Below, piece after piece: positions 4,636 to 61,933 of a stretch of 64,000 bases of DNA. The stretch lies in sequence record NC_070966.1; one strand, 5' to 3'. The position numbers and the translations under genes are program-made. The notes under the pieces are model-generated. The model saw nothing but the letters and a program-made list of their open reading frames with translations. It ran no database searches and was not told where the DNA came from. Each line of letters begins with the position of its first letter. Position 1 is the first letter of the stretch.

Positions 4636-4725
4636 GGAGAGGTGGCCGAGTGGTTGAAGGCACCTGACTACTAATCAGGCATACGAGCAATCGTATCGTG
4701 GGTTCGAAACCCACCCTCTCCGCCA
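4636..4725 (+). tRNA. tRNA-Ser(ACT)
   Basis: Acceptor GGAGAGG/CCTCTCC plus GCCA; anticodon arm CCTGA-CTACTAA-TCAGG; long variable arm; T loop TTCGAAA. Confidence 0.9.
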
Positions 4726-7434: not shown

Positions 7435-7508
7435 CGGACGTAACTCAGAGGTAGAGTGCAATCCTTCCAAGTTTGAAGTCGTGGGTTCGATTCCCATCGT
7501 CCGCTCCA
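7434..7508 (+). tRNA. tRNA-Gly(TCC)
   Basis: GCGGACG/CGTCCGC-TCCA; loop CTTCCAA. Confidence 0.95.
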
Positions 7509-7509
7509 T

Positions 7510-7586
7510 GCATCCTTAGCTCAGTTGGTTAGAGCATCAGTTTTACATACTGAGGGTCACTAGTTCAAGTCTAGTAGGATGTACCA
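7510..7586 (+). tRNA. tRNA-Val(TAC)
   Basis: GCATCCT/AGGATGT-ACCA; loop TTTACAT. Confidence 0.95.
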
Positions 7587-7605: not shown

Positions 7606-7681
7606 GGGAGATTAGTTCAGTGGTTAGAACCGTCAGCTCATAACTGATTAAACAGAGGTTCGAATCCTCTATCTCCTACCA
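7606..7681 (+). tRNA. tRNA-Met or Ile2 (CAT)
   Basis: GGGAGAT/ATCTCCT-ACCA; loop CTCATAA; Met versus lysidine-Ile cannot be resolved by eye. Confidence 0.9.
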
Positions 7682-7684
7682 AGT

Positions 7685-7761
7685 ACCACCTTAACTCAGA
7701 TGGATAGAGTACTCGACCGATAATCGAGTTGTCATTGGTTCAAGTCCAATAGGTGGTACCA
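7685..7761 (+). tRNA. tRNA-Ile(GAT)
   Basis: ACCACCT/AGGTGGT-ACCA; loop CCGATAA. Confidence 0.93.
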
Positions 7762-10826: not shown

Positions 10827-10847
10827 TAGACAAGATTTACCAGATCT

Positions 10848-10990
10848 AGTCGTAGCATATCTCTATTTTCCCGGAAGGTCGTGAGTTCGAGTCTCATCAC
10901 CGCACCCAATTACCTACAATTGGACTGATGCGGTGTAGCTCAGTGGTAGAGCGTTCGTTTTATCTTGAAGATATCCTATCGATGATGACT
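10848..10990 (+). ncRNA. divergent Y-RNA-like RNA with a circularly permuted tRNA module
   Basis: T arm GTGAG-TTCGAGT-CTCAT, then acceptor CACCGCA...TGCGGTG closed internally, then D arm TAGCTCAGTGGTAGAGC; outer ATATCT/AGATAT and AGTCGT/ATGACT stems. Confidence 0.7.
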
Positions 10991-11142
10991 GTATGAATCT
11001 ATCGTAACGATTAAATATGCTCCGCGATAGGAGTGTATGTTACATTAACAAGAACAGGGTGGTTCCATGCGGAATGTGGTTCCACCCACCTCTTCTTATA
11101 TAAGATCATTCGGATTTTATATAATAAGAATTTGAGGTTTAC

Positions 11143-14477: not shown

Positions 14478-15122
14478 ATGTCAAAAGCAAGAGATTTACT
14501 TAATACCTTGAATGAAGCTGATGATTGGAATATTCACAAGAAAGAGTTGAAGAAGGCTGGATTTGATCTCCATCCTAATCATCACGCTAATGTGAATATC
14601 AATCGTAACAACTATCCTCAGAATCGTGATATCTATACGGGTAAAATGAGTAATGGTCATACGATGGTTATTACTCAATTAACTCCGATTGATATGGATC
14701 GATACGCATCTGTTAAGGATGCTTCTGGTAAATTTATCAAGCACTACTACGTAGCTCCTGTTAAACCTACACTGAGTAAAAGTCCTGTATTAAAGTCTAC
14801 AGCGATCGGTAATGATCCTAAGACAGTACTTGAAGAAATCAAAGCAGCTATGAGAATGGTTCCAGAAGGACGTCAGGCTACCTTTAGATCTGTTGAACAG
14901 AATGGTAAGTACTATGAGTTCGATGTCAGATACTGGGGAAGCTGGGAAGTTCCTGATGGTGAAGACGATGATGGAGACTACGACTTTGAAGTCTTGACAT
15001 CTAAATCGTCTAAGTCACTTCAGAACATTGTTGAGCCTATCATTAAGAAATATCCAAGTCTAGATATCTACTATCAAACTGGAGAGAAGAATTATATTAC
15101 TGTTCATGCTACTGTAAAGTAG
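14478..15122 (+). CDS. hypothetical protein, MSKA...NE tag family
   Basis: MSKARDLLNTLNE N-terminus. Confidence 0.8.
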   Translation: MSKARDLLNTLNEADDWNIHKKELKKAGFDLHPNHHANVNINRNNYPQNRDIYTGKMSNGHTMVITQLTPIDMDRYASVKDASGKFIKHYYVAPVKPTLSKSPVLKSTAIGNDPKTVLEEIKAAMRMVPEGRQATFRSVEQNGKYYEFDVRYWGSWEVPDGEDDDGDYDFEVLTSKSSKSLQNIVEPIIKKYPSLDIYYQTGEKNYITVHATVK

Positions 15123-15132
15123 TTGACAGTAT

Positions 15133-15217
15133 GTCGGTATGGCGGAATTGGTAGACGCCCTGGTTTTAGGTACCAGTGTCGAAAGACGTGTAGGTTCGAG
15201 TCCTATTACCGACACCA
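15133..15217 (+). tRNA. tRNA-Leu(TAG)
   Basis: GTCGGTA/TACCGAC-ACCA; loop TTTAGGT; long variable arm. Confidence 0.95.
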
Positions 15218-15223
15218 AATTAT

Positions 15224-15358
15224 GACTTGATGTTGCGAAAGAAATGGTTACTTCGTATTCCAAACGAGAAATGTAGGTATCGAATCCTGCTATCCTAATA
15301 GGATATCGTCTAAGATAGGACGCTAAAATTTCCATTTCTGACACTATCTCATCAAGTC
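15224..15358 (+). ncRNA. Y-RNA-like unit 1 (permuted tRNA-Gly-like module)
   Basis: GACTTGATG-TTGCGA...TATCT-CATCAAGTC; inner AGAAATGG/CCATTTCT; loop ATTCCAA, then T arm, TATCC-TAATA-GGATA, then D arm. Confidence 0.75.
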
Positions 15359-15366
15359 TCATATTC

Positions 15367-15449
15367 AGATCTTGACGTTGCGACTAGTATCGGATACTTC
15401 GCTTTGGTTGCTAAAAACTCCGATGCAATATACTATCTCGTCAAGATCT
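15367..15449 (+). ncRNA. Y-RNA-like unit 2 (short; no T/D arms)
   Basis: AGATCTTGACG-TTGCGA...TATCT-CGTCAAGATCT; inner GTATCGGA/TCCGATGC; apical GC-TTTGGTT-GC. Confidence 0.7.
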
Positions 15450-15459
15450 TTCAGTTTAT

Positions 15460-15604
15460 CCTAACGTTGCGAATTAAACAGTTACTTCGATATCAAGCAG
15501 AAGGTCAATGGTTCGAATCCATTCATGCGACACGCGTTGCATGTAGCTCAGTTGGTTAGAGCGTCCGCCACCACAAGATCTGTTTAAGTCATTATCTCGT
15601 TAGG
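15460..15604 (+). ncRNA. Y-RNA-like unit 3 (permuted tRNA module)
   Basis: CCTAACG-TTGCGA...TATCT-CGTTAGG; TTAAACAG/CTGTTTAA; AATGG-TTCGAAT-CCATT, CATGCGAC/GTTGCATG, TAGCTCAGTTGGTTAGAGC. Confidence 0.8.
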
Positions 15605-15613
15605 TCCTTATAA

Positions 15614-15758
15614 CCTAGTGTTGCGATCGGTACAACTTCATCGCATTGTAAGCCCTGTGTCATTGGTTCAAATCCAATTCCTCCGTCCATCTATCGGAGG
15701 ATAGCTCAGTCTGGTAGAGCAAGGAAAGTATGTTGTATCAATATACCATCTCACTAGG
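15614..15758 (+). ncRNA. Y-RNA-like unit 4 (permuted tRNA-Thr-like module)
   Basis: CCTAGTG-TTGCGA...CATCT-CACTAGG; loop ATTGTAA; ATTGG-TTCAAAT-CCAAT, TCCTCCG/CGGAGGA, TAGCTCAGTCTGGTAGAGC. Confidence 0.8.
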
Positions 15759-15896
15759 ATCCTTATCTCATCCACCAACCTCGGTGTAAGAGTGGAAAGA
15801 GTTACGTGATCGTATGAGAATACGATCACAGTCATTTAGGTCATGTACCATGTGTACAAGGATCATTCGAAGGTGCTCGTCATCTTCAGCAAATAA

Positions 15897-16040
15897 TGTA
15901 GAGTTGCGAATATATCAAGTTCATCGCTTACCATATACCAAGCGGGTAGCTCAGTGGTTAGAGCACTAGGATGTAACAGTCGTAGAGGTCGTCGGTTCGA
16001 ATCCGACTCTAACTTCTTGATATAGACTTATCTCTCTACA
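15897..16040 (+). ncRNA. Y-RNA-like unit 5 (tRNA arms in normal D-anticodon-T order)
   Basis: TGTAGAG-TTGCGA...TATCT-CTCTACA; TATATCAAG/CTTGATATA; D arm TAGCTCAGTGGTTAGAGC precedes T arm GTCGG-TTCGAAT-CCGAC. Confidence 0.75.
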
Positions 16041-16049
16041 ACTTTTATA

Positions 16050-16184
16050 TGTACTGTTGCGACTAATACGGTTACTTCGTTGCAAATGAAACATAGGTTC
16101 GAATCCTATCCAGAGGATTGTCGTAAGATGACATCTGGCTGAGCATTGGTGAGCTCATCTCCGTATTAACTACATCTCAGTACA
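16050..16184 (+). ncRNA. Y-RNA-like unit 6 (permuted tRNA-Cys-like module)
   Basis: TGTACTG-TTGCGA...CATCT-CAGTACA; TAATACGG/CCGTATTA; loop TTGCAAA; ATAGG-TTCGAAT-CCTAT, CCAGA/TCTGG, TGAGC/GCTCA. Confidence 0.78.
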
Positions 16185-16195
16185 ATTACAATTCG

Positions 16196-16350
16196 TACCG
16201 TTGCGAATGATATGAATACATCGCTGTAGAACCGACGTCGTAAGACATGCTAGTTCAAGTCTAGCTCTCCGTCCCAATACTATGACGGAGATGGTGAAAT
16301 TGGTAGACACATCGGTAGATAAATCTTCATATCGGCTTACAATCTCGGTA
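16196..16350 (+). ncRNA. Y-RNA-like unit 7 (permuted type-II tRNA-Tyr-like module)
   Basis: TACCG-TTGCGA...AATCT-CGGTA; TGATATGAA/TTCATATCG; CTGTAGA, variable arm, GCTAG-TTCAAGT-CTAGC, TCTCCGTC/GACGGAGA, TGGTGAAATTGGTAGACAC. Confidence 0.8.
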
Positions 16351-16360
16351 TATCTTAGAC

Positions 16361-16385
16361 GCTATGTTGCGATAGTCCTCATAGC
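16361..16385 (+). promoter_or_regulatory. minimal Y-stem hairpin in the Ro60 5' leader
   Basis: GCTATG-TTGCGA-TAGTCCT-CATAGC, ending 20 nt before the Ro60 ATG. Confidence 0.55.
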
Positions 16386-16405
16386 ATTATCATAGGGAAA
16401 ATGTC

Positions 16406-17974
16406 ATGGCTTCGATCAATAATAAGTCAGTTGCTAATCTTGCACGTACGGTTGCTCCTAAGGCAGTTGTAGCACCTCGTACATTCACTGGTTTATCTCA
16501 TAACATTCGTAACAATAATGGTGCGATGGCGTATGATATCACTCCTATCGAGCAATTGAGACGTACTGTTCTCTCTTGCATGCTCTGGGAGGATTCTGCA
16601 TATGAGTCTGGTGAACAGATTGCTAATCGTATTGAAAGATTGATCGGAGAGTGTGATCCCTCTGATGTAGCACATCTTGCTCGTGAAGCAAGACATATCA
16701 TGAAGCTACGTCATGTTCCTCTCTTTATGTGCATCACGATGCTGAAGTATCCCGAACATAAGAAATATGTTCGTAAGACACTCGCATCAGTTATTGAGCG
16801 TCCTGATGAGCTTGGTCAAGCTCTCGCTCTCTACTGGAAGGATGCTCTTTCTCCTGCTCGTACTACTGAAGATACTGAAATCGGACCTCGAGTTACTTAC
16901 GTTTCTCAGAGAAAGTCTGATCTGAATCTTCCTCTCCAACTACGTAGAGGTCTTGAAGATGCTCTACAGAAGTTTGACTCTTATCAGTTGAAGAAGTACC
17001 TTATGAAGGACAAGCCTGTCTCTATGGCTGACATTCTTCGTATCGTCCACCCTAAGGGTAAGACTGATGAGATCAAAGCTACCTATGGCGAAATCGTCAA
17101 GGGTACTGCTACTGCACCTGATACATGGGAGTCTCGTCTCTCATCTTCTGGTAGATCTGAGAAAGCTACAATCTTCACAGATATGCTCGAACGTAACAAA
17201 TTAGGTGCAATGGCTCTACTGAAGAATCTGCGTGGTATGACTGAGGCTGGTGTTGATACCAATCTTATTAATACTGCGATTCAGAAGATGAATACTGAAC
17301 GTGTTCTTCCTTTCAGATTCCTCACAGCTGCTCGTCATGCTCCTCAGTTCAAGTCTAGTCTCGGTGAGGCTATGCTAAAATCTCTGAAGGACATTCAGAA
17401 TCTGCCTGGTCATACAGTACTACTGATTGACATCTCAGGTAGTATGGGTGGACGTATTTCAGGTAAGTCTGATCTGAGACGTATTGATGCTGCAGCTGCT
17501 ATTGCTATCATGTTGAAGGAAATTTGTCAGTCTTCTGATATGTTTGTCTTCAATTATGGTACGTATCAAGTACGTAACGATAACGTCTTCTGCGTGAATC
17601 AACCTACTGCTAACAATCACGGATACTCCAGGATTGTTGAGAGTACGAGGATCTACAATTACGAAGAAGATGCTGTAGTGAAGAGAGGATTTGATCTATC
17701 AGATCTTATCGTCAATTCAGTAGTTGGTGGAACTGATCTCCAGCAAGCTGTCAGTTATATCAATAATACTGTAGAGTATGATCGTATGATTATCTTTACA
17801 GATGACGAATCATCTACTGTTCCGCCAGCTCCTAGAGATCTTTCCTATTCGATCAACGTATCGACTGGAAACTATGGAGTGACGTACGGTGACTATGTCC
17901 ACATCAACGGATTCTCTGAAGGTGTGATTGGCTATGTCACTGAGTACGATAAGTACGTGAAGAGTCAGAATTAA
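16406..17974 (+). CDS. rsr: Ro60/Rsr ribonucleoprotein (TROVE domain plus vWA)
   Basis: N-terminal 'NNNGAMAY...EQLRRTVLSCMLWEDSAYESG', 'LKLRHVP', 'PDTWESRLS', 'ALLKNLRGM', 'RVLPFRFLTA'; vWA 'LIDISGSM...GGTD...IIFTDDES'. Confidence 0.92.
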   Translation: MASINNKSVANLARTVAPKAVVAPRTFTGLSHNIRNNNGAMAYDITPIEQLRRTVLSCMLWEDSAYESGEQIANRIERLIGECDPSDVAHLAREARHIMKLRHVPLFMCITMLKYPEHKKYVRKTLASVIERPDELGQALALYWKDALSPARTTEDTEIGPRVTYVSQRKSDLNLPLQLRRGLEDALQKFDSYQLKKYLMKDKPVSMADILRIVHPKGKTDEIKATYGEIVKGTATAPDTWESRLSSSGRSEKATIFTDMLERNKLGAMALLKNLRGMTEAGVDTNLINTAIQKMNTERVLPFRFLTAARHAPQFKSSLGEAMLKSLKDIQNLPGHTVLLIDISGSMGGRISGKSDLRRIDAAAAIAIMLKEICQSSDMFVFNYGTYQVRNDNVFCVNQPTANNHGYSRIVESTRIYNYEEDAVVKRGFDLSDLIVNSVVGGTDLQQAVSYINNTVEYDRMIIFTDDESSTVPPAPRDLSYSINVSTGNYGVTYGDYVHINGFSEGVIGYVTEYDKYVKSQN

Positions 17975-17981
17975 GTAGTGA

Positions 17982-18009
17982 GAATTGGGAGTGAAATACC
18001 TCCCAATTC
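17982..18009 (+). terminator. stem-loop after Ro60 (terminator or processing site)
   Basis: GAATTGGGAG-TGAAATAC-CTCCCAATTC; weak U tract. Confidence 0.45.
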
Positions 18010-18022
18010 CATTTATCTAAAT

Positions 18023-18106
18023 GCCCACTTGTCGGAATTGGTAGACGACCGAGACTTAAAATCTTGTGCCTATGGCGTACCGGTTCGAGTCCGGTAGTGG
18101 GTACCA
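18023..18106 (+). tRNA. tRNA-Leu(TAA)
   Basis: GCCCACT/AGTGGGT-ACCA; loop CTTAAAA. Confidence 0.95.
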
Positions 18107-59387: not shown

Positions 59388-60566
59388 TTATAGAACAGTA
59401 AGATAGATACTGTTGAACTTCTTACCAAAATTCAAGGTACCTCCACTGCTCTGATCGCCAGCGAGTGTAGGTGTTGTAATCGCATCTACATCTGCACTAA
59501 TACCATGTCGATACATCGCGATGTGATTAGTTCTTAAAGTTTCAGCTCTATCTAGCATCGACTTACCGAGTACGAAGTTATGCGAAAGTGATTTATCTTG
59601 CCATGAATAATTTATGTTACCATCAAGTGGTCTTAGATCCTGGTCAAGCTTACTTTCATCAAGTGTGAAAGCATAGATATTATGACGTCTACGTCTGATA
59701 TCGAATGCGAACGAGTCGTCTATAACAAGATCGTGAGATGTAATACGACCAGTTGTTGTCTGGAACATATAATAATCTTCACGGACGAATCTGTCCAGAA
59801 TAAGATTAACGTCAAGCAGATTAGGTCTGAATCTATCGTAAACAAGATCCGACGATATCTGGTGACCTCTGATGGTCTCAATCTTGATTTCAGAATAATC
59901 GTAAATCAGATCCGAGTCAAAAGTATTACATAGAAGTAGATTAATCGTATTTGAGGTCGAAGTTGATGTTGATCCATAAGGTCTGCTCAACTTACTCATA
60001 TCAAGAGTAAAGTCTCTTGACAGACGATGCATACCTAGAGATACAACATTGTTAGAATAATCGACTGATTCATCATAAACTCGACAATTCGTAATACCTT
60101 GAAGAGTCAAGCATAGAGGAAAGATTTCTCTCGCGAAGTCTTCAAGAGTAAGAATCTGATCAAGTGTGATTCTTACCTCATTCTCGAATACGAGAGTAAC
60201 GTCTGTACAACCATTCTCTGACTTAACATAGATTATGTTCTTAGGTTGGAGATTCAATAGTCTCAAGACTAATTGAAATCCTTCTTCAGTACCTTTGATA
60301 TTAGCCAAGTCTGACATAATCATCGAAACTGATGTTTCGTCGACATTGCCAGAAAGTAGCTTACCTAGAGTACTGGAACCTAAAAACTTAAGAATCTGCT
60401 GAGCATCGTAGTGTTCGGATGCTGGATTGTACAGATTCTTGATCTTGTTAATTTCTGGAGATACTGTATCATTGATAACCTTATCGAGAACGTTCGTTAC
60501 GTTCTCGTAAAGTGGATACTCTCGCAGATTAGGTGGTAAGTAATTAATACTTTTCATCATATTCAT
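59388..60566 (-). CDS. baseplate/tail protein
   Basis: 'IKGTEEGFQLVL' tail-protein-like motif; position between wedge genes. Confidence 0.6.
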   Translation of the reverse strand: MNMMKSINYLPPNLREYPLYENVTNVLDKVINDTVSPEINKIKNLYNPASEHYDAQQILKFLGSSTLGKLLSGNVDETSVSMIMSDLANIKGTEEGFQLVLRLLNLQPKNIIYVKSENGCTDVTLVFENEVRITLDQILTLEDFAREIFPLCLTLQGITNCRVYDESVDYSNNVVSLGMHRLSRDFTLDMSKLSRPYGSTSTSTSNTINLLLCNTFDSDLIYDYSEIKIETIRGHQISSDLVYDRFRPNLLDVNLILDRFVREDYYMFQTTTGRITSHDLVIDDSFAFDIRRRRHNIYAFTLDESKLDQDLRPLDGNINYSWQDKSLSHNFVLGKSMLDRAETLRTNHIAMYRHGISADVDAITTPTLAGDQSSGGTLNFGKKFNSIYLTVL

Positions 60567-61933
60567 TAGCTATATCCTAAATCAGGATCAGTACCTGAAA
60601 CATCCAGTGTATTGATATCAAGAGAATACTGGATATCATAGCTGTTGATTTTAAAGTATTGATTATAGTTTGCACGCTTGTCTGCGATCGGATACTTAGG
60701 ATAAACTCTCTTGACTCCAGGTAGATCCATAGCGATCAAACCTGAGACTGAGAAGATTCCACCTAACTTGTATTCCATTGATTGGAAGTAAGACTTAATA
60801 AGAGCATCTACTTCAACACTGTCTGCAATTGTACTGAGTACGACTAGTACCTTGATATTGACACCTAGTTCAACAGGATCTTGAAGAACAATATTCGTAC
60901 CTAGAACTTTATGTTTATCTAAGTACGCATAAAATTGATCTTTCTCGTAACTGAGAAGATGTCTTTTCTGGTCTGTAACGTATGCGAGATCAACAGTACA
61001 ACACGTATTTTGTCTCTTCACTGCATAACTTGAGATGATACCTGCATAAGATAGCGAGATACTATTGTAGTCCGCTAGTGTAATTAGACGTCTCTTAGTC
61101 GTGAAGTATCCTGGAGCAACTGACTTTAGTTTCTCGAGACTATCTTCATTAGATCCATAAGAGAGAATTGTACCAGATAAGACTTCACCAGCATTGAATG
61201 TCAACTGAGATAGATCCAAACTCAGATCTTCAGTAGCTGCTCCAGGTTGAATGTATTCAACTTTAACGATATCGCCATTGTTAAGTTTCATCCCTAGATC
61301 GTCATCACCAAAGATGAAGTAGGTACCTGCCGTATAAGTTCTTTCTAGAACATCAGCATCAACTAGCTCTTCAGCATTTCGTACAACAGTTACAAGTTCG
61401 TCATTTACCATGACGTTGTAGAGATTGTTGTCAATGGTGTCTTCAACAAGAAATCGTTCGAATACTTTCGTACTTGTAGAAGTGAATTGTACTGACTTCC
61501 AGAGACCAATAACTACATCAACAGTATTCTGACCAGCAACAAATCCTGTATCAGATAGAATCGAAAGAAACTCACCTCGATAGTTACCGATCGGAGTCTC
61601 TTTGGTCCACTGAACAGGATTAGTTAATGTGAATGTAATTCTGAATCTAGGTGCTGCCATTCTATTGACATTGTAACCTAGAGTCGTTGACAATCCTACT
61701 ACTGAAGATCGTAGTCGAGCAGTATCAATGTAGGCCTCTCTACGATTAGCAGATGCCATGTAGCTCAAGAATGATCCAAGACCTGCAGCGAGTTCGATGG
61801 TGGTCATACCAGCACCACCCTCGTAGAAGTCTTTCCATCTTCTCTGGTAGTCGTTCAGTGACTGAACATATGTCTTCAAGTCGTTTCTGATAGACTCAAA
61901 GGAGATTGAAGTAGGATTGATAATATTACTCAT
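60566..61933 (-). CDS. baseplate wedge subunit (T4 gp6/baseplate J-like)
   Basis: 'SFESIRNDLKTYV', 'REAYIDTARLRSSVV', 'EDSLEKLK..AP..F...RLITLADY'. Confidence 0.85.
   Translation of the reverse strand: MSNIINPTSISFESIRNDLKTYVQSLNDYQRRWKDFYEGGAGMTTIELAAGLGSFLSYMASANRREAYIDTARLRSSVVGLSTTLGYNVNRMAAPRFRITFTLTNPVQWTKETPIGNYRGEFLSILSDTGFVAGQNTVDVVIGLWKSVQFTSTSTKVFERFLVEDTIDNNLYNVMVNDELVTVVRNAEELVDADVLERTYTAGTYFIFGDDDLGMKLNNGDIVKVEYIQPGAATEDLSLDLSQLTFNAGEVLSGTILSYGSNEDSLEKLKSVAPGYFTTKRRLITLADYNSISLSYAGIISSYAVKRQNTCCTVDLAYVTDQKRHLLSYEKDQFYAYLDKHKVLGTNIVLQDPVELGVNIKVLVVLSTIADSVEVDALIKSYFQSMEYKLGGIFSVSGLIAMDLPGVKRVYPKYPIADKRANYNQYFKINSYDIQYSLDINTLDVSGTDPDLGYS

What the first reader, a model, noticed from the sequence alone, without database searches (positions are those of the whole stretch)
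15224..17974. Ro60/Rsr gene preceded by a tandem array of seven Y-RNA-like, tRNA-mimicking RNAs
Seen: GTTGCGA occurs at 15232, 15377, 15466, 15620, 15903, 16056 and 16200 (and 16366). Each is followed 55-140 nt later by (T/C/A)ATCTC. The 5-11 nt flanking these motifs differ in every unit yet always base-pair (GACTTGATG/CATCAAGTC, AGATCTTGACG/CGTCAAGATCT, CCTAACG/CGTTAGG, CCTAGTG/CACTAGG, TGTAGAG/CTCTACA, TGTACTG/CAGTACA, TACCG/CGGTA). A second unit-specific inner stem and a shared (A/G)C/TTC-like linker follow. In units 1, 3, 4, 6 and 7 the apex is a T arm, then an acceptor-like stem closed by a loop, then a D arm, with no CCA end. Established: bacterial Ro60 (Rsr) binds Y RNAs; YrlA-class Y RNAs have this permuted T/acceptor/D tRNA mimicry; some phages carry rsr plus a Y RNA. 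Inference: this phage expresses a diversified panel of seven or more Y RNAs rather than one or two, each loading Ro60 with a different tRNA-like head. They could act as decoys or adaptors against host anticodon nucleases, or in tRNA repair and decay. I do not know of a described array of this size.
Basis: partly seen in the sequence, partly recalled or inferred. Interest (0 to 1): 0.95.

Follow-up and report, generated by a model that had tools for sequence, protein, structure and literature searches.

The report
Seven Y-RNA genes before phage Ro60
A Rhizobium phage carries seven different small RNA genes of the Y-RNA type, most with a tRNA-shaped head, in a row in front of its Ro60 gene; this is a real, unannotated, large example of a known RNA-protein partnership, and equally large arrays occur elsewhere.

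Summary
The window is Rhizobium phage RHph_TM30. Bases 15224-16351 lie between tRNA-Leu and a TROVE/Ro60 gene and are unannotated in GenBank. They hold seven discrete units of 83-157 nt.

Each unit has:
- a unit-specific outer stem;
- an invariant asymmetric internal loop (5' TTGCGA, 3' ATCT);
- a unit-specific 8-9 bp inner stem;
- a conserved (T)TACTTCG or TTCATCGC element;
- a variable head.

Five heads have the YrlA layout (T arm, closed acceptor-like stem, D arm). One (u5) has the normal tRNA order. One (u2) has no tRNA-like head.

Covariation is strong among the seven paralogs, against the 97% identical phage Y65, and across arrays of six other phages. Rfam YrlA matches are below threshold. 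A model built here finds the non-seed units at E 1e-9 to 1e-13.

The array is not unique in size. By the same criteria CcrColossus and CcrPW have eight units and an alphaproteobacterial genome contig has seven. Most Ro60 loci have one to three.

Expression, Ro60 binding and function are untested. I file it as a new, large member of the known Y-RNA/Ro60 kind, with fast-changing heads. An eighth, separate YrlA-like RNA lies at 10833-11001.

The parts
15133..15217 (+). tRNA-Leu(UAG), 6 nt upstream of unit 1; the array continues the phage tRNA cluster
   Evidence: ARAGORN, Rfam tRNA 53.7 bits, GenBank annotation
15224..15358 (+). Unit 1, 135 nt. Outer stem GACTTGATG/CATCAAGTC, loop TTGCGAA / GACACTATCT, inner stem AGAAATGG/CCATTTCT. 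Head has V hairpin, T-like arm, closed acceptor-like stem and a degenerate D arm
   Evidence: Fold z -4.3; model R1 65.1 bits, E 1.3e-13, not a seed sequence; parse
15367..15449 (+). Unit 2, 83 nt, short form. It has an 11-bp outer stem, the same internal loop, an 8-bp inner stem and TACTTCG, but no tRNA-like head
   Evidence: Fold z -4.2; parse; not matched by R1, as expected
15460..15604 (+). Unit 3, 145 nt, YrlA layout: T arm, 8-bp closed acceptor-like stem, TA, D arm
   Evidence: Rfam YrlA 36.2 bits full length, below the gathering score of 69; 0 of 39 predicted pairs broken against Y65 despite 16 substitutions
15614..15758 (+). Unit 4, 145 nt, YrlA layout with a 7-bp acceptor-like stem. 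Its variable loop plus T arm match phage tRNA-Ile at 20 of 21 bases
   Evidence: Rfam YrlA 37.3 bits; fold z -3.6; blastn against the phage tRNAs
15759..15896 (+). Structured spacer with four hairpins, not a Y unit. The hairpin at about 15868-15886 keeps pairing through two double substitutions in Y65
   Evidence: Fold z -3.3; TM30/Y65 alignment, positions 15871-2 and 15884-5
15897..16040 (+). Unit 5, 144 nt. Same basal module, but the head is in normal tRNA order: extra hairpin, D arm, stem-loop, T arm. The inner stem takes the place of the acceptor stem
   Evidence: Rfam tRNA 33.9 bits over model positions 6-65; compensatory U-A to C-G in the middle stem against Y65
16050..16184 (+). Unit 6, 135 nt, YrlA layout with a long acceptor-like stem-loop
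   Evidence: R1 48.2 bits, E 1.9e-9, not a seed sequence; fold z -2.2
16195..16351 (+). Unit 7, 157 nt, YrlA layout with an extra hairpin, an 8-bp acceptor-like stem and a class II (Leu-like) D arm
   Evidence: R1 46.7 bits, E 4.3e-9, not a seed sequence; 0 of 40 pairs broken against Y65 with 23 substitutions, and a D-stem U-A to G-C change
16361..16385 (+). Leader hairpin GCTATG-TTGCGATAGTCCT-CATAGC, 20 nt before the Ro60 start codon. It carries the 5' motif and a near copy of the 3' motif in one loop. It may be a Ro60 site on the gene's own mRNA
   Evidence: Sequence; eighth GTTGCGA; the fold of the leader is not better than shuffles, z +0.2
16406..17974 (+). Ro60/Rsr homolog, 522 aa: TROVE ring domain plus a vWA domain with DISGSM (DxSxS)
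   Evidence: Pfam TROVE 2.8e-13 with vWA_Ro60 below cut-off; PDB 9KOP/9L5Y phage phiLo Ro60, E 1.5e-12; GenBank product 'TROVE domain-containing protein'
17982..18009 (+). Terminator-like hairpin after the Ro60 gene, with a weak T tail
   Evidence: Consensus scan only
18023..18106 (+). tRNA-Leu(UAA), closing the locus
   Evidence: ARAGORN
10833..11001 (+). Separate YrlA-like RNA 5.4 kb upstream, in an unannotated gap: T arm, 7-bp closed acceptor-like stem with a 24-nt loop, TA, D arm. It lacks TTGCGA/ATCT and has GTCGTAG ... TATCGATGATGAC instead
   Evidence: R1 35.1 bits, E 3e-6; Rfam YrlA 35.9 bits full length; 6 compensatory double changes and no broken pair against Y65 at 87% identity

Best explanation
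Bases 15224-16351 encode seven distinct Y RNAs, the small non-coding RNA partners of the Ro60 protein encoded just downstream.

Shown from sequence:
- Each unit closes its 5' and 3' ends into a stem.
- Each carries one and the same asymmetric internal loop (5' UUGCGA, 3' AUCU, closed by a G-C pair).
- Then come a second stem and a conserved ACUUCG or UCAUCGC element.
- Then comes a head. The head is a circularly permuted tRNA body in five units, a tRNA body in normal order in one, and absent in one.

Inferred from what is known of Ro60 and Y RNA in Xenopus, Deinococcus, Salmonella and Thermus phage phiLo:
- The units are probably transcribed with the tRNA cluster and the Ro60 gene.
- They are probably cut apart at the AU-rich spacers of 6-10 nt.
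- The invariant loop and its flanking helices would dock on the outer face of the Ro60 ring.
- The head would project outward as the effector module.

My committed view of function, least certain:
- The tRNA-shaped heads engage proteins that recognise the tRNA elbow and acceptor region.
- The phage would thus make a mixed population of Ro60 particles.
- These would tether Ro60 to an exoribonuclease such as host PNPase for decay or quality control of structured RNA, including the phage's own 20 or more tRNAs.
- They would also gate access to the Ro60 cavity.
- Competitive binding of host enzymes that target tRNA is the main alternative use of the same heads.
For: Position and strand next to a TROVE/Ro60 gene.

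Anatomy: folds of single units recover outer stem, loop, inner stem and V, T, acceptor-like and D arms. The T stem abuts the acceptor-like stem with no spacer, and 1-2 nt (2 in four of the five units) separate that stem from the D stem, as in tRNA.

Covariation among the seven paralogs:
- 94.6% of cells paired against 61% in shuffles;
- 14 of 16 pairs changed on both sides;
- slid controls 31-43% paired.

Covariation in 35 units of seven phages: 92.8% paired against 52% in shuffles, and 16 of 16 pairs changed on both sides.

TM30 against Y65: 47 substitutions in units 3, 5 and 7, none of 116 predicted pairs broken, and 3 double compensatory changes.

The loop motif is identical in all paralogs of one phage but differs between phage lineages, as expected of the site for a shared, co-evolving protein:
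- TTGCGA/ATCT in TM30 and in three actinophage-like viral contigs (two of them near-identical);
- TGGCGTA/TTCC in the Caulobacter and Brevundimonas phages;
- TGGTGWA/TTCC in the Xanthomonas phage;
- GATGCGTA/TTTTTCTA (TTTTACTA in one unit) in Streptomyces phage BRock.

Model matches:
- Rfam YrlA gives sub-threshold matches to units 3 and 4, with E about 1e-6.
- Model R1 finds the non-seed units 1, 6 and 7 full length at E 1e-13 to 4e-9.
- R1 gives 157 hits at E no more than 0.001 in 80 bacterial loci oriented on the Ro60 gene, all on the Ro60 strand and nearly all upstream of it.

Literature:
- YrlA-type RNAs were found near Ro60 in 254 bacteria and 22 phages (PMC4201824).
- Phage phiLo Ro60 binds two upstream Y-like RNAs and forms a complex with host PNPase (PMC12135203).
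Against: - No unit reaches the Rfam YrlA gathering score (36-37 bits against 69), and five units give no Rfam YrlA match at all.
- The 5' motif UUGCGA fits only the CGA(A) core of the published GNCGAAN0-1G box.
- There are no data on transcription, processing or Ro60 binding for this phage.
- No promoter or terminator was called inside the array.
- My inner-helix register was chosen by best pairing within a few bases, and alignment A7 was fitted to the model. Both inflate the pairing figures. The outer helix register was fixed by sequence motifs alone.
- No PNPase or RNA-repair gene was seen among the nine neighbouring proteins tested. The effector is therefore a guess.
Confidence: 0.8

Rival explanations
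1. Decoy panel. The same RNAs exist mainly to bind and neutralise host enzymes that attack or modify tRNA, such as defence nucleases. Ro60 would serve as a stabilising carrier rather than as an RNA-decay factor.
For: - The heads differ from unit to unit and resemble tRNA bodies.
- Divergence between TM30 and Y65 is 8.2% in heads, 1.7% in basal modules and 1.4% in the Ro60 gene. It is concentrated in three heads, as expected of parts under conflict or frequent exchange.
- A Ro60-like protein of phage Bas63, next to a tRNA block, counters the ppl defence system (PMC11482910).
- Competitive inhibition of an anticodon nuclease by YrlA has been proposed (PMC7790460).
Against: - TM30 heads have no canonical anticodon loop, so nucleases that read the anticodon loop would not be engaged through it.
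- The patchy divergence can equally be mosaic recombination; the ORF just upstream is 24% divergent.
- No defence target is known in Rhizobium.
- Bacterial chromosomes carry similar arrays, which argues against a purely phage-specific counter-defence role.
Confidence: 0.25
2. Cis-acting scaffold. The units are not free RNAs. They would be structured parts of a long precursor that punctuate processing of the tRNA cluster and control stability or translation of the Ro60 mRNA.
For: - The array lies between a tRNA and the Ro60 start, with no promoter or terminator called inside it.
- tRNA-like parts could attract RNase P or RNase Z.
- The leader hairpin at 16361-16385 carries the same motif.
Against: - Each unit closes on itself, and spacers are only 6-10 nt.
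- The same unit design is found downstream of Ro60 in a Microcystis phage and in crAss001.
- A separate copy lies 5.4 kb away in TM30.
- In Salmonella, Deinococcus, Mycobacterium and phage phiLo, related units are free Ro60-bound RNAs (PMC4201824, PMC12135203).
Confidence: 0.07
3. Decayed tRNA duplications. The units are dead remnants of tandem tRNA genes with no function.
For: - They lie in a tRNA cluster.
- T and D arms resemble those of resident tRNAs; unit 4 matches tRNA-Ile at 20 of 21 bases.
- A tRNA-dimer origin of YrlA has been proposed (bioRxiv 10.1101/312249).
Against: - A non-tRNA basal module is kept letter for letter in all seven units while the stems covary.
- No pair is broken by 47 substitutions against Y65.
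- The same architecture sits next to Ro60 genes in distant phages and bacteria.
- ARAGORN calls no tRNA in the array.
Confidence: 0.02

Closest known systems
Salmonella Typhimurium YrlA and YrlB with Rsr (Rfam RF02553; Chen et al. 2013, 2014)
   Same: - Same-strand neighbours of a Ro60 gene.
- Terminal stem with a CGA-containing 5' strand motif.
- Head with T arm, closed acceptor-like stem, D arm and an optional long variable arm.
- A long tRNA-like form together with a shorter form.
   Different: - Seven units instead of two, upstream rather than downstream of the gene.
- Motif UUGCGA instead of GNCGAA.
- D and T arms vary between units, whereas they are reported as nearly invariant in YrlA RNAs (PMC4201824).
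- Scores are half the Rfam threshold.
- No rtcBA repair genes were seen nearby.
Deinococcus radiodurans Yrn1/Yrn2 and the Ro60-Y RNA-PNPase machine (RYPER)
   Same: - Several small RNAs upstream of rsr.
- A Y RNA head with D-like and T-like arms in normal order, as in TM30 unit 5.
- This is the proposed working model: the Y RNA tethers Ro60 to PNPase and gates the ring.
   Different: Yrn1 keeps both strands of the metazoan-like Ro60 helix. In TM30 the normal-order head sits on the same basal module as the permuted heads. The two layouts therefore coexist in one array instead of marking separate lineages.
Thermus phage phiLo Ro60 with Yrl1 and Yrl2 (PMC12135203; PDB 9KOP, 9L5Y)
   Same: - A phage Ro60 homologous to the TM30 protein (E 1.5e-12).
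- Y-like RNAs directly upstream.
- A CGA(A)-containing internal loop between two stems.
- RNA binding and a complex with host PNPase were shown in vitro.
   Different: phiLo has two units and TM30 has seven. The tRNA-like heads and the tRNA cluster context of TM30 are not described for phiLo.
Caulobacter phage CcrColossus and CcrPW, Brevundimonas jumbo phages, Xanthomonas phage 10KY502B, Streptomyces phage BRock
   Same: - Same design and same position before a TROVE gene.
- By the criteria used here they have 8, 8, 5-6, 5 and 4 units, mixing long and short forms.
- The ACTTCG element is shared.
- Unit order is partly conserved among the Caulobacter and Brevundimonas phages.
   Different: - The loop motifs are lineage-specific.
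- In those phages a TTGACA-type promoter-like box precedes the first unit, whereas TM30's array directly follows a tRNA.
- CcrColossus was listed as having Y-like RNAs by Chen et al. 2014 (as cited in PMC12135203). I could not read how many, because the supplement is not held.
Phage Bas63 gp130, a Ro60-like counter-defence protein (PMC11482910)
   Same: A phage Ro60-like protein encoded beside a tRNA block. The authors suspect that some of the annotated tRNAs are Y RNAs.
   Different: The evidence there is genetic (it counters the ppl system), and no Y RNA was defined. No sequence comparison with TM30 was made here.

Membership tests
Bacterial/phage Y RNA, YrlA class (Chen et al. 2014; Rfam RF02553) | Encoded within 4 kb of a Ro60/TROVE gene, on the same strand | tested here: met
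   Units at 15224-16351 and gene at 16406-17974, all on the + strand
Bacterial/phage Y RNA, YrlA class (Chen et al. 2014; Rfam RF02553) | The 5' and 3' ends pair into a long stem that carries the conserved 5'-strand box GNCGAAN0-1G | tested here: inconclusive
   Stems are present and covary. The box reads (U)UGCGA(A/C/U): the CGA core is kept, but the first G of the box is U. The same variant occurs in three actinophage-like contigs (two near-identical) before Ro60-like genes
Bacterial/phage Y RNA, YrlA class (Chen et al. 2014; Rfam RF02553) | tRNA-like module with the T arm 5' of the D arm and a closed acceptor-like stem between them | tested here: met
   Met in units 1, 3, 4, 6 and 7. Not met in unit 2 (no head) or unit 5 (normal order)
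Bacterial/phage Y RNA, YrlA class (Chen et al. 2014; Rfam RF02553) | Score at or above the Rfam gathering threshold of 69 bits | tested here: not met
   No YrlA hit at gathering. Unit 3 scores 36.2 bits and unit 4 scores 37.3 bits; the other units give no YrlA hit even at E up to 10
Bacterial/phage Y RNA, YrlA class (Chen et al. 2014; Rfam RF02553) | Bound by Ro60/Rsr | not testable with these tools
   Needs pull-down or EMSA. Only indirect support exists: the loop is identical in all paralogs and lineage-specific between phages
Bacterial/phage Y RNA, YrlA class (Chen et al. 2014; Rfam RF02553) | Accumulates as a discrete small RNA carrying tRNA-type modifications | not testable with these tools
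   No transcript data for this phage were available
Ro60/Rsr protein | TROVE (HEAT-repeat ring) domain | tested here: met
   PF05731, 50.3 bits against a cut-off of 23; aligned to the phiLo Ro60 structure over residues 34-371
Ro60/Rsr protein | C-terminal vWA domain with a MIDAS motif | tested here: inconclusive
   PF25045 scores 22.7 bits, below its cut-off of 27.7. DISGSM (DxSxS) is present and invariant in the alignment of nine phage homologs
Deinococcus Yrn1-type Y RNA (unit 5 only) | D-like arm 5' of the T arm with a stem-loop between them, on a Ro60-binding stem | tested here: met
   The order is shown by an Rfam tRNA match over model positions 6-65, 33.9 bits. The metazoan-like two-strand Ro60 helix of Yrn1 is not present
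Genuine tRNA genes or tRNA pseudogenes | Cloverleaf with an open acceptor stem and an anticodon arm | tested here: not met
   ARAGORN finds none in 15224-16351. The only Rfam tRNA match lacks the acceptor stem

The most novel reading that the evidence does not exclude
The constant Ro60-binding base is a socket. tRNA-derived heads would be swapped onto it by recombination with tRNA genes or with other phages. That would give each phage a fast-changing library of uncleavable tRNA-body decoys, displayed on Ro60, that neutralise host tRNA-directed defence or modification enzymes. The motif-bearing hairpin in the Ro60 leader would let free Ro60 set its own synthesis to the supply of Y RNA.
Probability: 0.15. 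Interest if true: 0.85.

Novelty: new member of a known kind. Interest (0 to 1): 0.5.

Why it matters
What the tRNA-like domain of bacterial Y RNAs is for remains an open question. Here one cultured phage, on a non-pathogenic laboratory host, offers seven natural variants on one constant Ro60-binding base. They comprise five permuted tRNA-like heads, one in normal order and one headless.

A sister phage is 97% identical, and three of its heads have changed while keeping every base pair. That is a ready-made series for asking which partners each head recruits.

The survey also shows that arrays of 3-8 Y-like RNAs before Ro60 genes are common in Alphaproteobacteria and their phages. They are unannotated in the GenBank records examined, and in three phage records a unit is partly annotated as a short tRNA. 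This matters for genome annotation and for estimates of phage tRNA content.

Tried and rejected
- **Related loci with the single Ro60 protein.** A scan of IMG/VR found none. An alignment of nine homologs was needed.
- **Exact pattern scan.** I scanned IMG/VR for GTTGCGA N8-11 TTACTTCG and got 113 or more hits. None encodes a Ro60 relative within the fetched DNA, and only L024, L072 and L108 (the last two near-identical) have real units. The rest are chance matches of a 15-base pattern.
- **MAFFT alignment of whole units.** Alignments A1 and A2 were unreliable at the 3' end, and in A2 I gave wrong coordinates for the Y65 row. I replaced them with a hand-registered alignment padded with N, which stayed ungapped.
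- **Automatic parsing.** My first parsers mis-assigned stems in other phages. I fixed this with lineage-specific 3' motifs.
- **Bacterial genomes.** The first scan failed because no alignment stretch was conserved enough. A four-sequence alignment worked.
- **Tandem Repeats Finder.** It finds nothing: the units are too diverged to register as a repeat.
- **Promoter and terminator scan.** It is no richer than shuffles and finds nothing inside the array.
- **Fold of the Ro60 leader.** It is not better than shuffles, so the autoregulation idea rests on the motif alone.
- **Neighbouring proteins.** Pfam on nine of them found no RNA ligase, kinase, cyclase or PNPase.
- **Descriptor hit at 60522-60687.** It is antisense to two long ORFs and is a false positive.
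- **Head similarity to resident tRNAs.** Most matches (15 of 15 T arms, a 19 of 19 D arm) are within what tRNA consensus gives by chance. Only unit 4 against tRNA-Ile is clearly more.
- **Literature access.** The supplement of Chen et al. 2014 and three reviews could not be read.

Full report
**Identity of the window**

Bases 15100-18100 are 100% identical to Rhizobium phage RHph_TM30 (MN988521, 207.6 kb, Kleczkowskaviridae, Cuauhnahuacvirus). Seven further phage isolates (nine further database records) match at 97-99.4%. Window position equals record position minus 124000.

GenBank annotates tRNA-Leu(tag) at 15133-15217, nothing from 15218 to 16405, and a 'TROVE domain-containing protein' at 16406-17974. 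tRNA-Leu(taa) follows at 18023-18106. The locus is the tail of a cluster of 20 tRNA genes on one strand.

**Check of the observation**

GTTGCGA is at all eight stated positions. The window holds 15 copies on both strands against 4.3 expected, and eight of them lie in 1.14 kb on one strand.

Each of the first seven is followed 58-142 nt later by ATCTC, and every quoted flanking stem is there. When the 5' strand of one unit is paired with the 3' strand of another, outer-stem pairing drops from 6.9 to 4.6 of 7. Inner-stem pairing drops from 7.0 to 3.2 of 7. Only the true assignment, among 5040 permutations, reaches the observed total. Tandem Repeats Finder sees nothing, so the units share an architecture rather than a sequence.

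**Anatomy**

The units are:

| Unit | Coordinates | Length (nt) |
|---|---|---|
| u1 | 15224-15358 | 135 |
| u2 | 15367-15449 | 83 |
| u3 | 15460-15604 | 145 |
| u4 | 15614-15758 | 145 |
| u5 | 15897-16040 | 144 |
| u6 | 16050-16184 | 135 |
| u7 | 16195-16351 | 157 |

They are separated by AU-rich spacers of 6-10 nt, except for a 138-nt structured spacer between u4 and u5.

From the outside in, each unit has:
- an outer stem of 6-11 bp closed by an invariant G-C pair;
- an asymmetric internal loop, 5' TTGCGA plus 1-3 nt and 3' 4-7 nt plus (Y)ATCT;
- an inner stem of 8-9 bp;
- a conserved (T)TACTTCG (u1, u2, u3, u6) or TTCATCGC / TACATCGC (u4, u5, u7).

Single-sequence folds recover this layout, with z-scores from -1.7 to -4.3.

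In u1, u3, u4, u6 and u7 the head is a variable hairpin, a T arm, an acceptor-like stem closed by a loop, and a D arm. The T stem abuts the acceptor-like stem with no spacer. Two nucleotides (one in u1) link that stem to the D stem, as in tRNA. The inner stem occupies the place of the anticodon stem.

The exceptions are:
- u1 has a degenerate D arm.
- u2 has no tRNA-like head.
- u5 has an extra hairpin, then D arm, a stem-loop and T arm in normal tRNA order. Rfam's tRNA model matches it over positions 6-65 at 33.9 bits.

ARAGORN calls no tRNA in the array.

**Comparison with the known family**

Chen et al. 2014 (PMC4201824) defined YrlA RNAs by four traits:
- a Ro60 neighbour on the same strand;
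- a terminal stem with a GNCGAAN0-1G box on the 5' strand;
- T, acceptor-like and D arms in permuted order;
- often a variable arm.

They reported 355 such RNAs in 254 bacteria and 22 phages. According to PMC12135203, CcrColossus was among those phages.

Against Rfam 15, no TM30 unit reaches the YrlA gathering score of 69 bits. At an E-value threshold, u3 (36.2 bits, full length) and u4 (37.3 bits) match YrlA at E about 1e-6, and the other units do not. The TM30 box (U)UGCGA(A) keeps the CGA core of the published box only.

So the units work like YrlA-type Y RNAs and share the defining anatomy. They fail the curated score test, and binding to Ro60 cannot be tested here.

**The protein**

The 522-aa product has a TROVE domain (2.8e-13) and a vWA region below the Pfam cut-off, with a DISGSM motif. 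Its only solved relative by sequence is the Ro60 of Thermus phage phiLo (9KOP/9L5Y, E 1.5e-12). That protein binds two upstream Y-like RNAs and forms a complex with host PNPase in vitro (PMC12135203).

**Covariation**

I registered the basal modules by hand, anchoring on the loop motifs and padding with N. MAFFT left that register ungapped. The counts were as follows.

| Data set | Cells paired | Shuffled | Pairs changed on both sides | Slid controls |
|---|---|---|---|---|
| 7 TM30 units | 94.6% | 61% | 14 of 16 | 31-43% |
| 35 units of 7 phages | 92.8% | 52% | 16 of 16 | 39-49% |
| 39 matches aligned to model R1 | 93.9% | 56% | 31 of 31 | 40-45% |

For the seven TM30 units the covariation score was 1.07 against 0.31 in shuffles, with 0 of 500 shuffles as high.

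Three caveats apply:
- The inner-helix register was chosen by best pairing within a few bases.
- The third alignment was fitted to the model and includes weak hits.
- Paralogs and related phages are not independent samples.

An independent test uses phage Y65. Units 3, 5 and 7 differ from it at 16, 8 and 23 positions. Yet none of the 116 pairs predicted by RNAalifold is broken. Three pairs changed on both sides: the u3 T stem A-U to C-G, the u5 middle stem U-A to C-G, and the u7 D stem U-A to G-C. Nine pairs changed on one side and stayed paired.

**A model built here**

I built covariance model R1 from u3, u4 and one unit each of CcrColossus and Brevundimonas phage Gurke (142 positions, 31 pairs). 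It finds the non-seed units full length:
- u1 at 65.1 bits (E 1.3e-13);
- u6 at 48.2 bits (E 1.9e-9);
- u7 at 46.7 bits (E 4.3e-9).

It also finds long units before the TROVE genes of the other phages. As expected, it does not find u2 or u5. Partial hits at 7468-7552 and 7654-7717 are the tandem-tRNA artefact that Chen et al. warn about.

**How unusual is seven?**

tblastn finds TROVE homologs in 89 phage records. The upstream non-coding DNA of the ones I fetched shows the same unit design with lineage-specific loop motifs.

| Phage | Units | Position |
|---|---|---|
| CcrColossus | 8 | upstream |
| Gurke | 6 | upstream |
| Bambus | 5 | upstream |
| Xanthomonas phage 10KY502B | 5 | upstream |
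| Streptomyces phage BRock | 4 | upstream |
| Microcystis phage Mvi-JY20 | 1 | downstream |
| crAss001 | 1 | downstream |

A descriptor search, with a control-strand false-positive rate of about 0.07-0.11 per kb, gave these counts of upstream units per locus.

| Set | 0 | 1 | 2 | 3 | 4 | 5 | 6 | 8 |
|---|---|---|---|---|---|---|---|---|
| 75 IMG/VR Ro60 loci | 14 | 23 | 20 | 10 | 3 | 2 | 1 | 2 |
| 73 bacterial loci | 4 | 11 | 28 | 20 | 5 | 5 | 0 | 0 |

The two viral loci with 8 units are CcrColossus and CcrPW. In the 80 bacterial loci, R1 gave 157 hits at E no more than 0.001. All are on the Ro60 strand and nearly all lie upstream of the gene.

Reading one bacterial locus by eye, L268 (a 791-kb alphaproteobacterial contig) has seven units starting right after a tRNA.

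So seven is in the upper tail, but it is neither unique nor restricted to phages. I found no paper in the held library that describes arrays of five or more. However, the supplement of Chen et al. and the main reviews could not be read.

**The heads**

Divergence between TM30 and Y65 differs sharply by region.

| Region | Divergence |
|---|---|
| Heads | 8.2% |
| Basal modules | 1.7% |
| Ro60 gene | 1.4% |
| Two flanking tRNAs | 0% |

Almost all head changes lie in u3, u5 and u7, while u1, u4 and u6 are unchanged. This points to block exchange or selection on particular heads, with the Ro60-side module held fixed.

The variable loop and T arm of u4 match phage tRNA-Ile at 20 of 21 bases. That is more than consensus alone would give. 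The other matches to resident tRNAs are within what chance allows. This fits the published idea that YrlA arose from tRNA dimers (bioRxiv 10.1101/312249).

A normal-order head (u5) and permuted heads share one basal module in one array. Head and base therefore behave as exchangeable modules. The two layouts need not mark separate lineages, as was suggested for YrlA against Yrn1.

**Mechanism**

Shown:
- the anatomy;
- conservation of the basal loop within a phage and its change between lineages;
- covariation of all helices;
- linkage to Ro60.

Inferred from Xenopus, Deinococcus, Salmonella and phiLo work: the loop with its flanking helices is the Ro60 site, and the head is the effector module.

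My preferred function is a mixed set of Ro60 particles. They would be tethered through tRNA-like heads to an exoribonuclease such as host PNPase, or to other tRNA-binding factors. They would act in decay or quality control of structured RNA in a phage that makes at least 20 tRNAs.

The main rival use of the same RNAs is competitive binding of host enzymes that target tRNA. This has been proposed for YrlA (PMC7790460). It is in line with the counter-defence phenotype of the Ro60-like gp130 of phage Bas63 (PMC11482910). TM30 heads lack a canonical anticodon loop, so they could be inhibitors but not substrates.

No RNA-repair or PNPase gene was found among nine neighbouring proteins, and no promoter or terminator was called inside the array.

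**Other things seen**

- A further YrlA-like RNA lies at 10833-11001 in an unannotated gap. It scores 35.1 bits with R1 and 35.9 bits full length with Rfam YrlA. It has six compensatory double changes and no broken pair against Y65 at 87% identity. It lacks the TTGCGA/ATCT loop.
- The eighth GTTGCGA lies in a 25-nt hairpin 20 nt before the Ro60 start codon. The loop of that hairpin joins TTGCGA to TCCT. This may be a Ro60 site on the gene's own mRNA, but the fold is not significant.
- The u4-u5 spacer is structured (z -3.3). One of its hairpins keeps pairing through two double changes in Y65.

**Verdict**

The finding is real and correctly identified in kind. It is a large, diversified and so far unannotated array of Y-RNA genes before a phage Ro60 gene. 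It is a new member of a known kind rather than a new kind, and its size is matched or exceeded elsewhere. Expression, binding and function remain to be tested.

Noticed in passing
window 10833-11001 (+): An eighth YrlA-like RNA lies apart from the array, in an unannotated gap of the tRNA cluster. It has T arm, closed 7-bp acceptor-like stem and D arm, but a different basal loop (GTCGTAG ... TATCGATGATGAC). It shows six compensatory double changes and no broken pair against phage Y65.
   Followed up: yes
window 16361-16385 (+): A hairpin lies in the Ro60 leader. Its loop joins the 5' motif TTGCGA to TCCT, a near copy of the 3' motif. GCTATG can alternatively pair with CATAGG at the ribosome-binding site or with CATGGC at the start codon. 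This may mean autoregulation, but the fold is not better than shuffles.
   Followed up: partly
window 15759-15896 (+): The 138-nt spacer between units 4 and 5 has four hairpins (z -3.3). The hairpin at about 15868-15886 keeps pairing through two double substitutions in Y65. Its role is unknown; it could be another small RNA or a processing signal.
   Followed up: partly
window 14478-15122 (+): The 214-aa ORF just upstream of tRNA-Leu has no Pfam match. It differs at 24% of bases between TM30 and Y65, while the flanking tRNAs are identical. It is a mosaic or fast-evolving gene.
   Followed up: no
L008 2143-2210; L006 2781-2855; L005 2816-2883: GenBank 'tRNA-Gln' (68 nt) in CcrColossus, 'tRNA-Ser' in Brevundimonas phage Gurke and 'tRNA-Thr' (68 nt) in Xanthomonas phage 10KY502B lie inside Y-like units. 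They are probably mis-annotated tRNA-like heads.
   Followed up: partly
L008 2334-2447: One CcrColossus unit has a head made of an anticodon-like arm with the loop CTGCAAA (Cys-type) followed by a T arm, with no D arm. At least some phage Y-like RNAs therefore do carry an anticodon-loop mimic.
   Followed up: no
L268 2300-3500: A 791-kb alphaproteobacterial genome contig has seven Y-like units between a tRNA gene and its Ro60 gene. A roughly 250-nt repeat-rich insert lies after the fifth unit. It could be a chromosomal locus or a prophage at a tRNA site.
   Followed up: partly
L006 6357-6702; L007 6789-7046: The Brevundimonas jumbo phages Gurke and Bambus carry a permuted tmRNA (Rfam tmRNA_permuted, about 58 bits, above gathering) about 2-2.4 kb downstream of their Ro60 genes.
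   Followed up: no
window 4636-4725 (+): ARAGORN and GenBank call a tRNA-Ser with anticodon ACT, which has an unmodified-A wobble position. That is unusual for a bacterial-type tRNA set.
   Followed up: no
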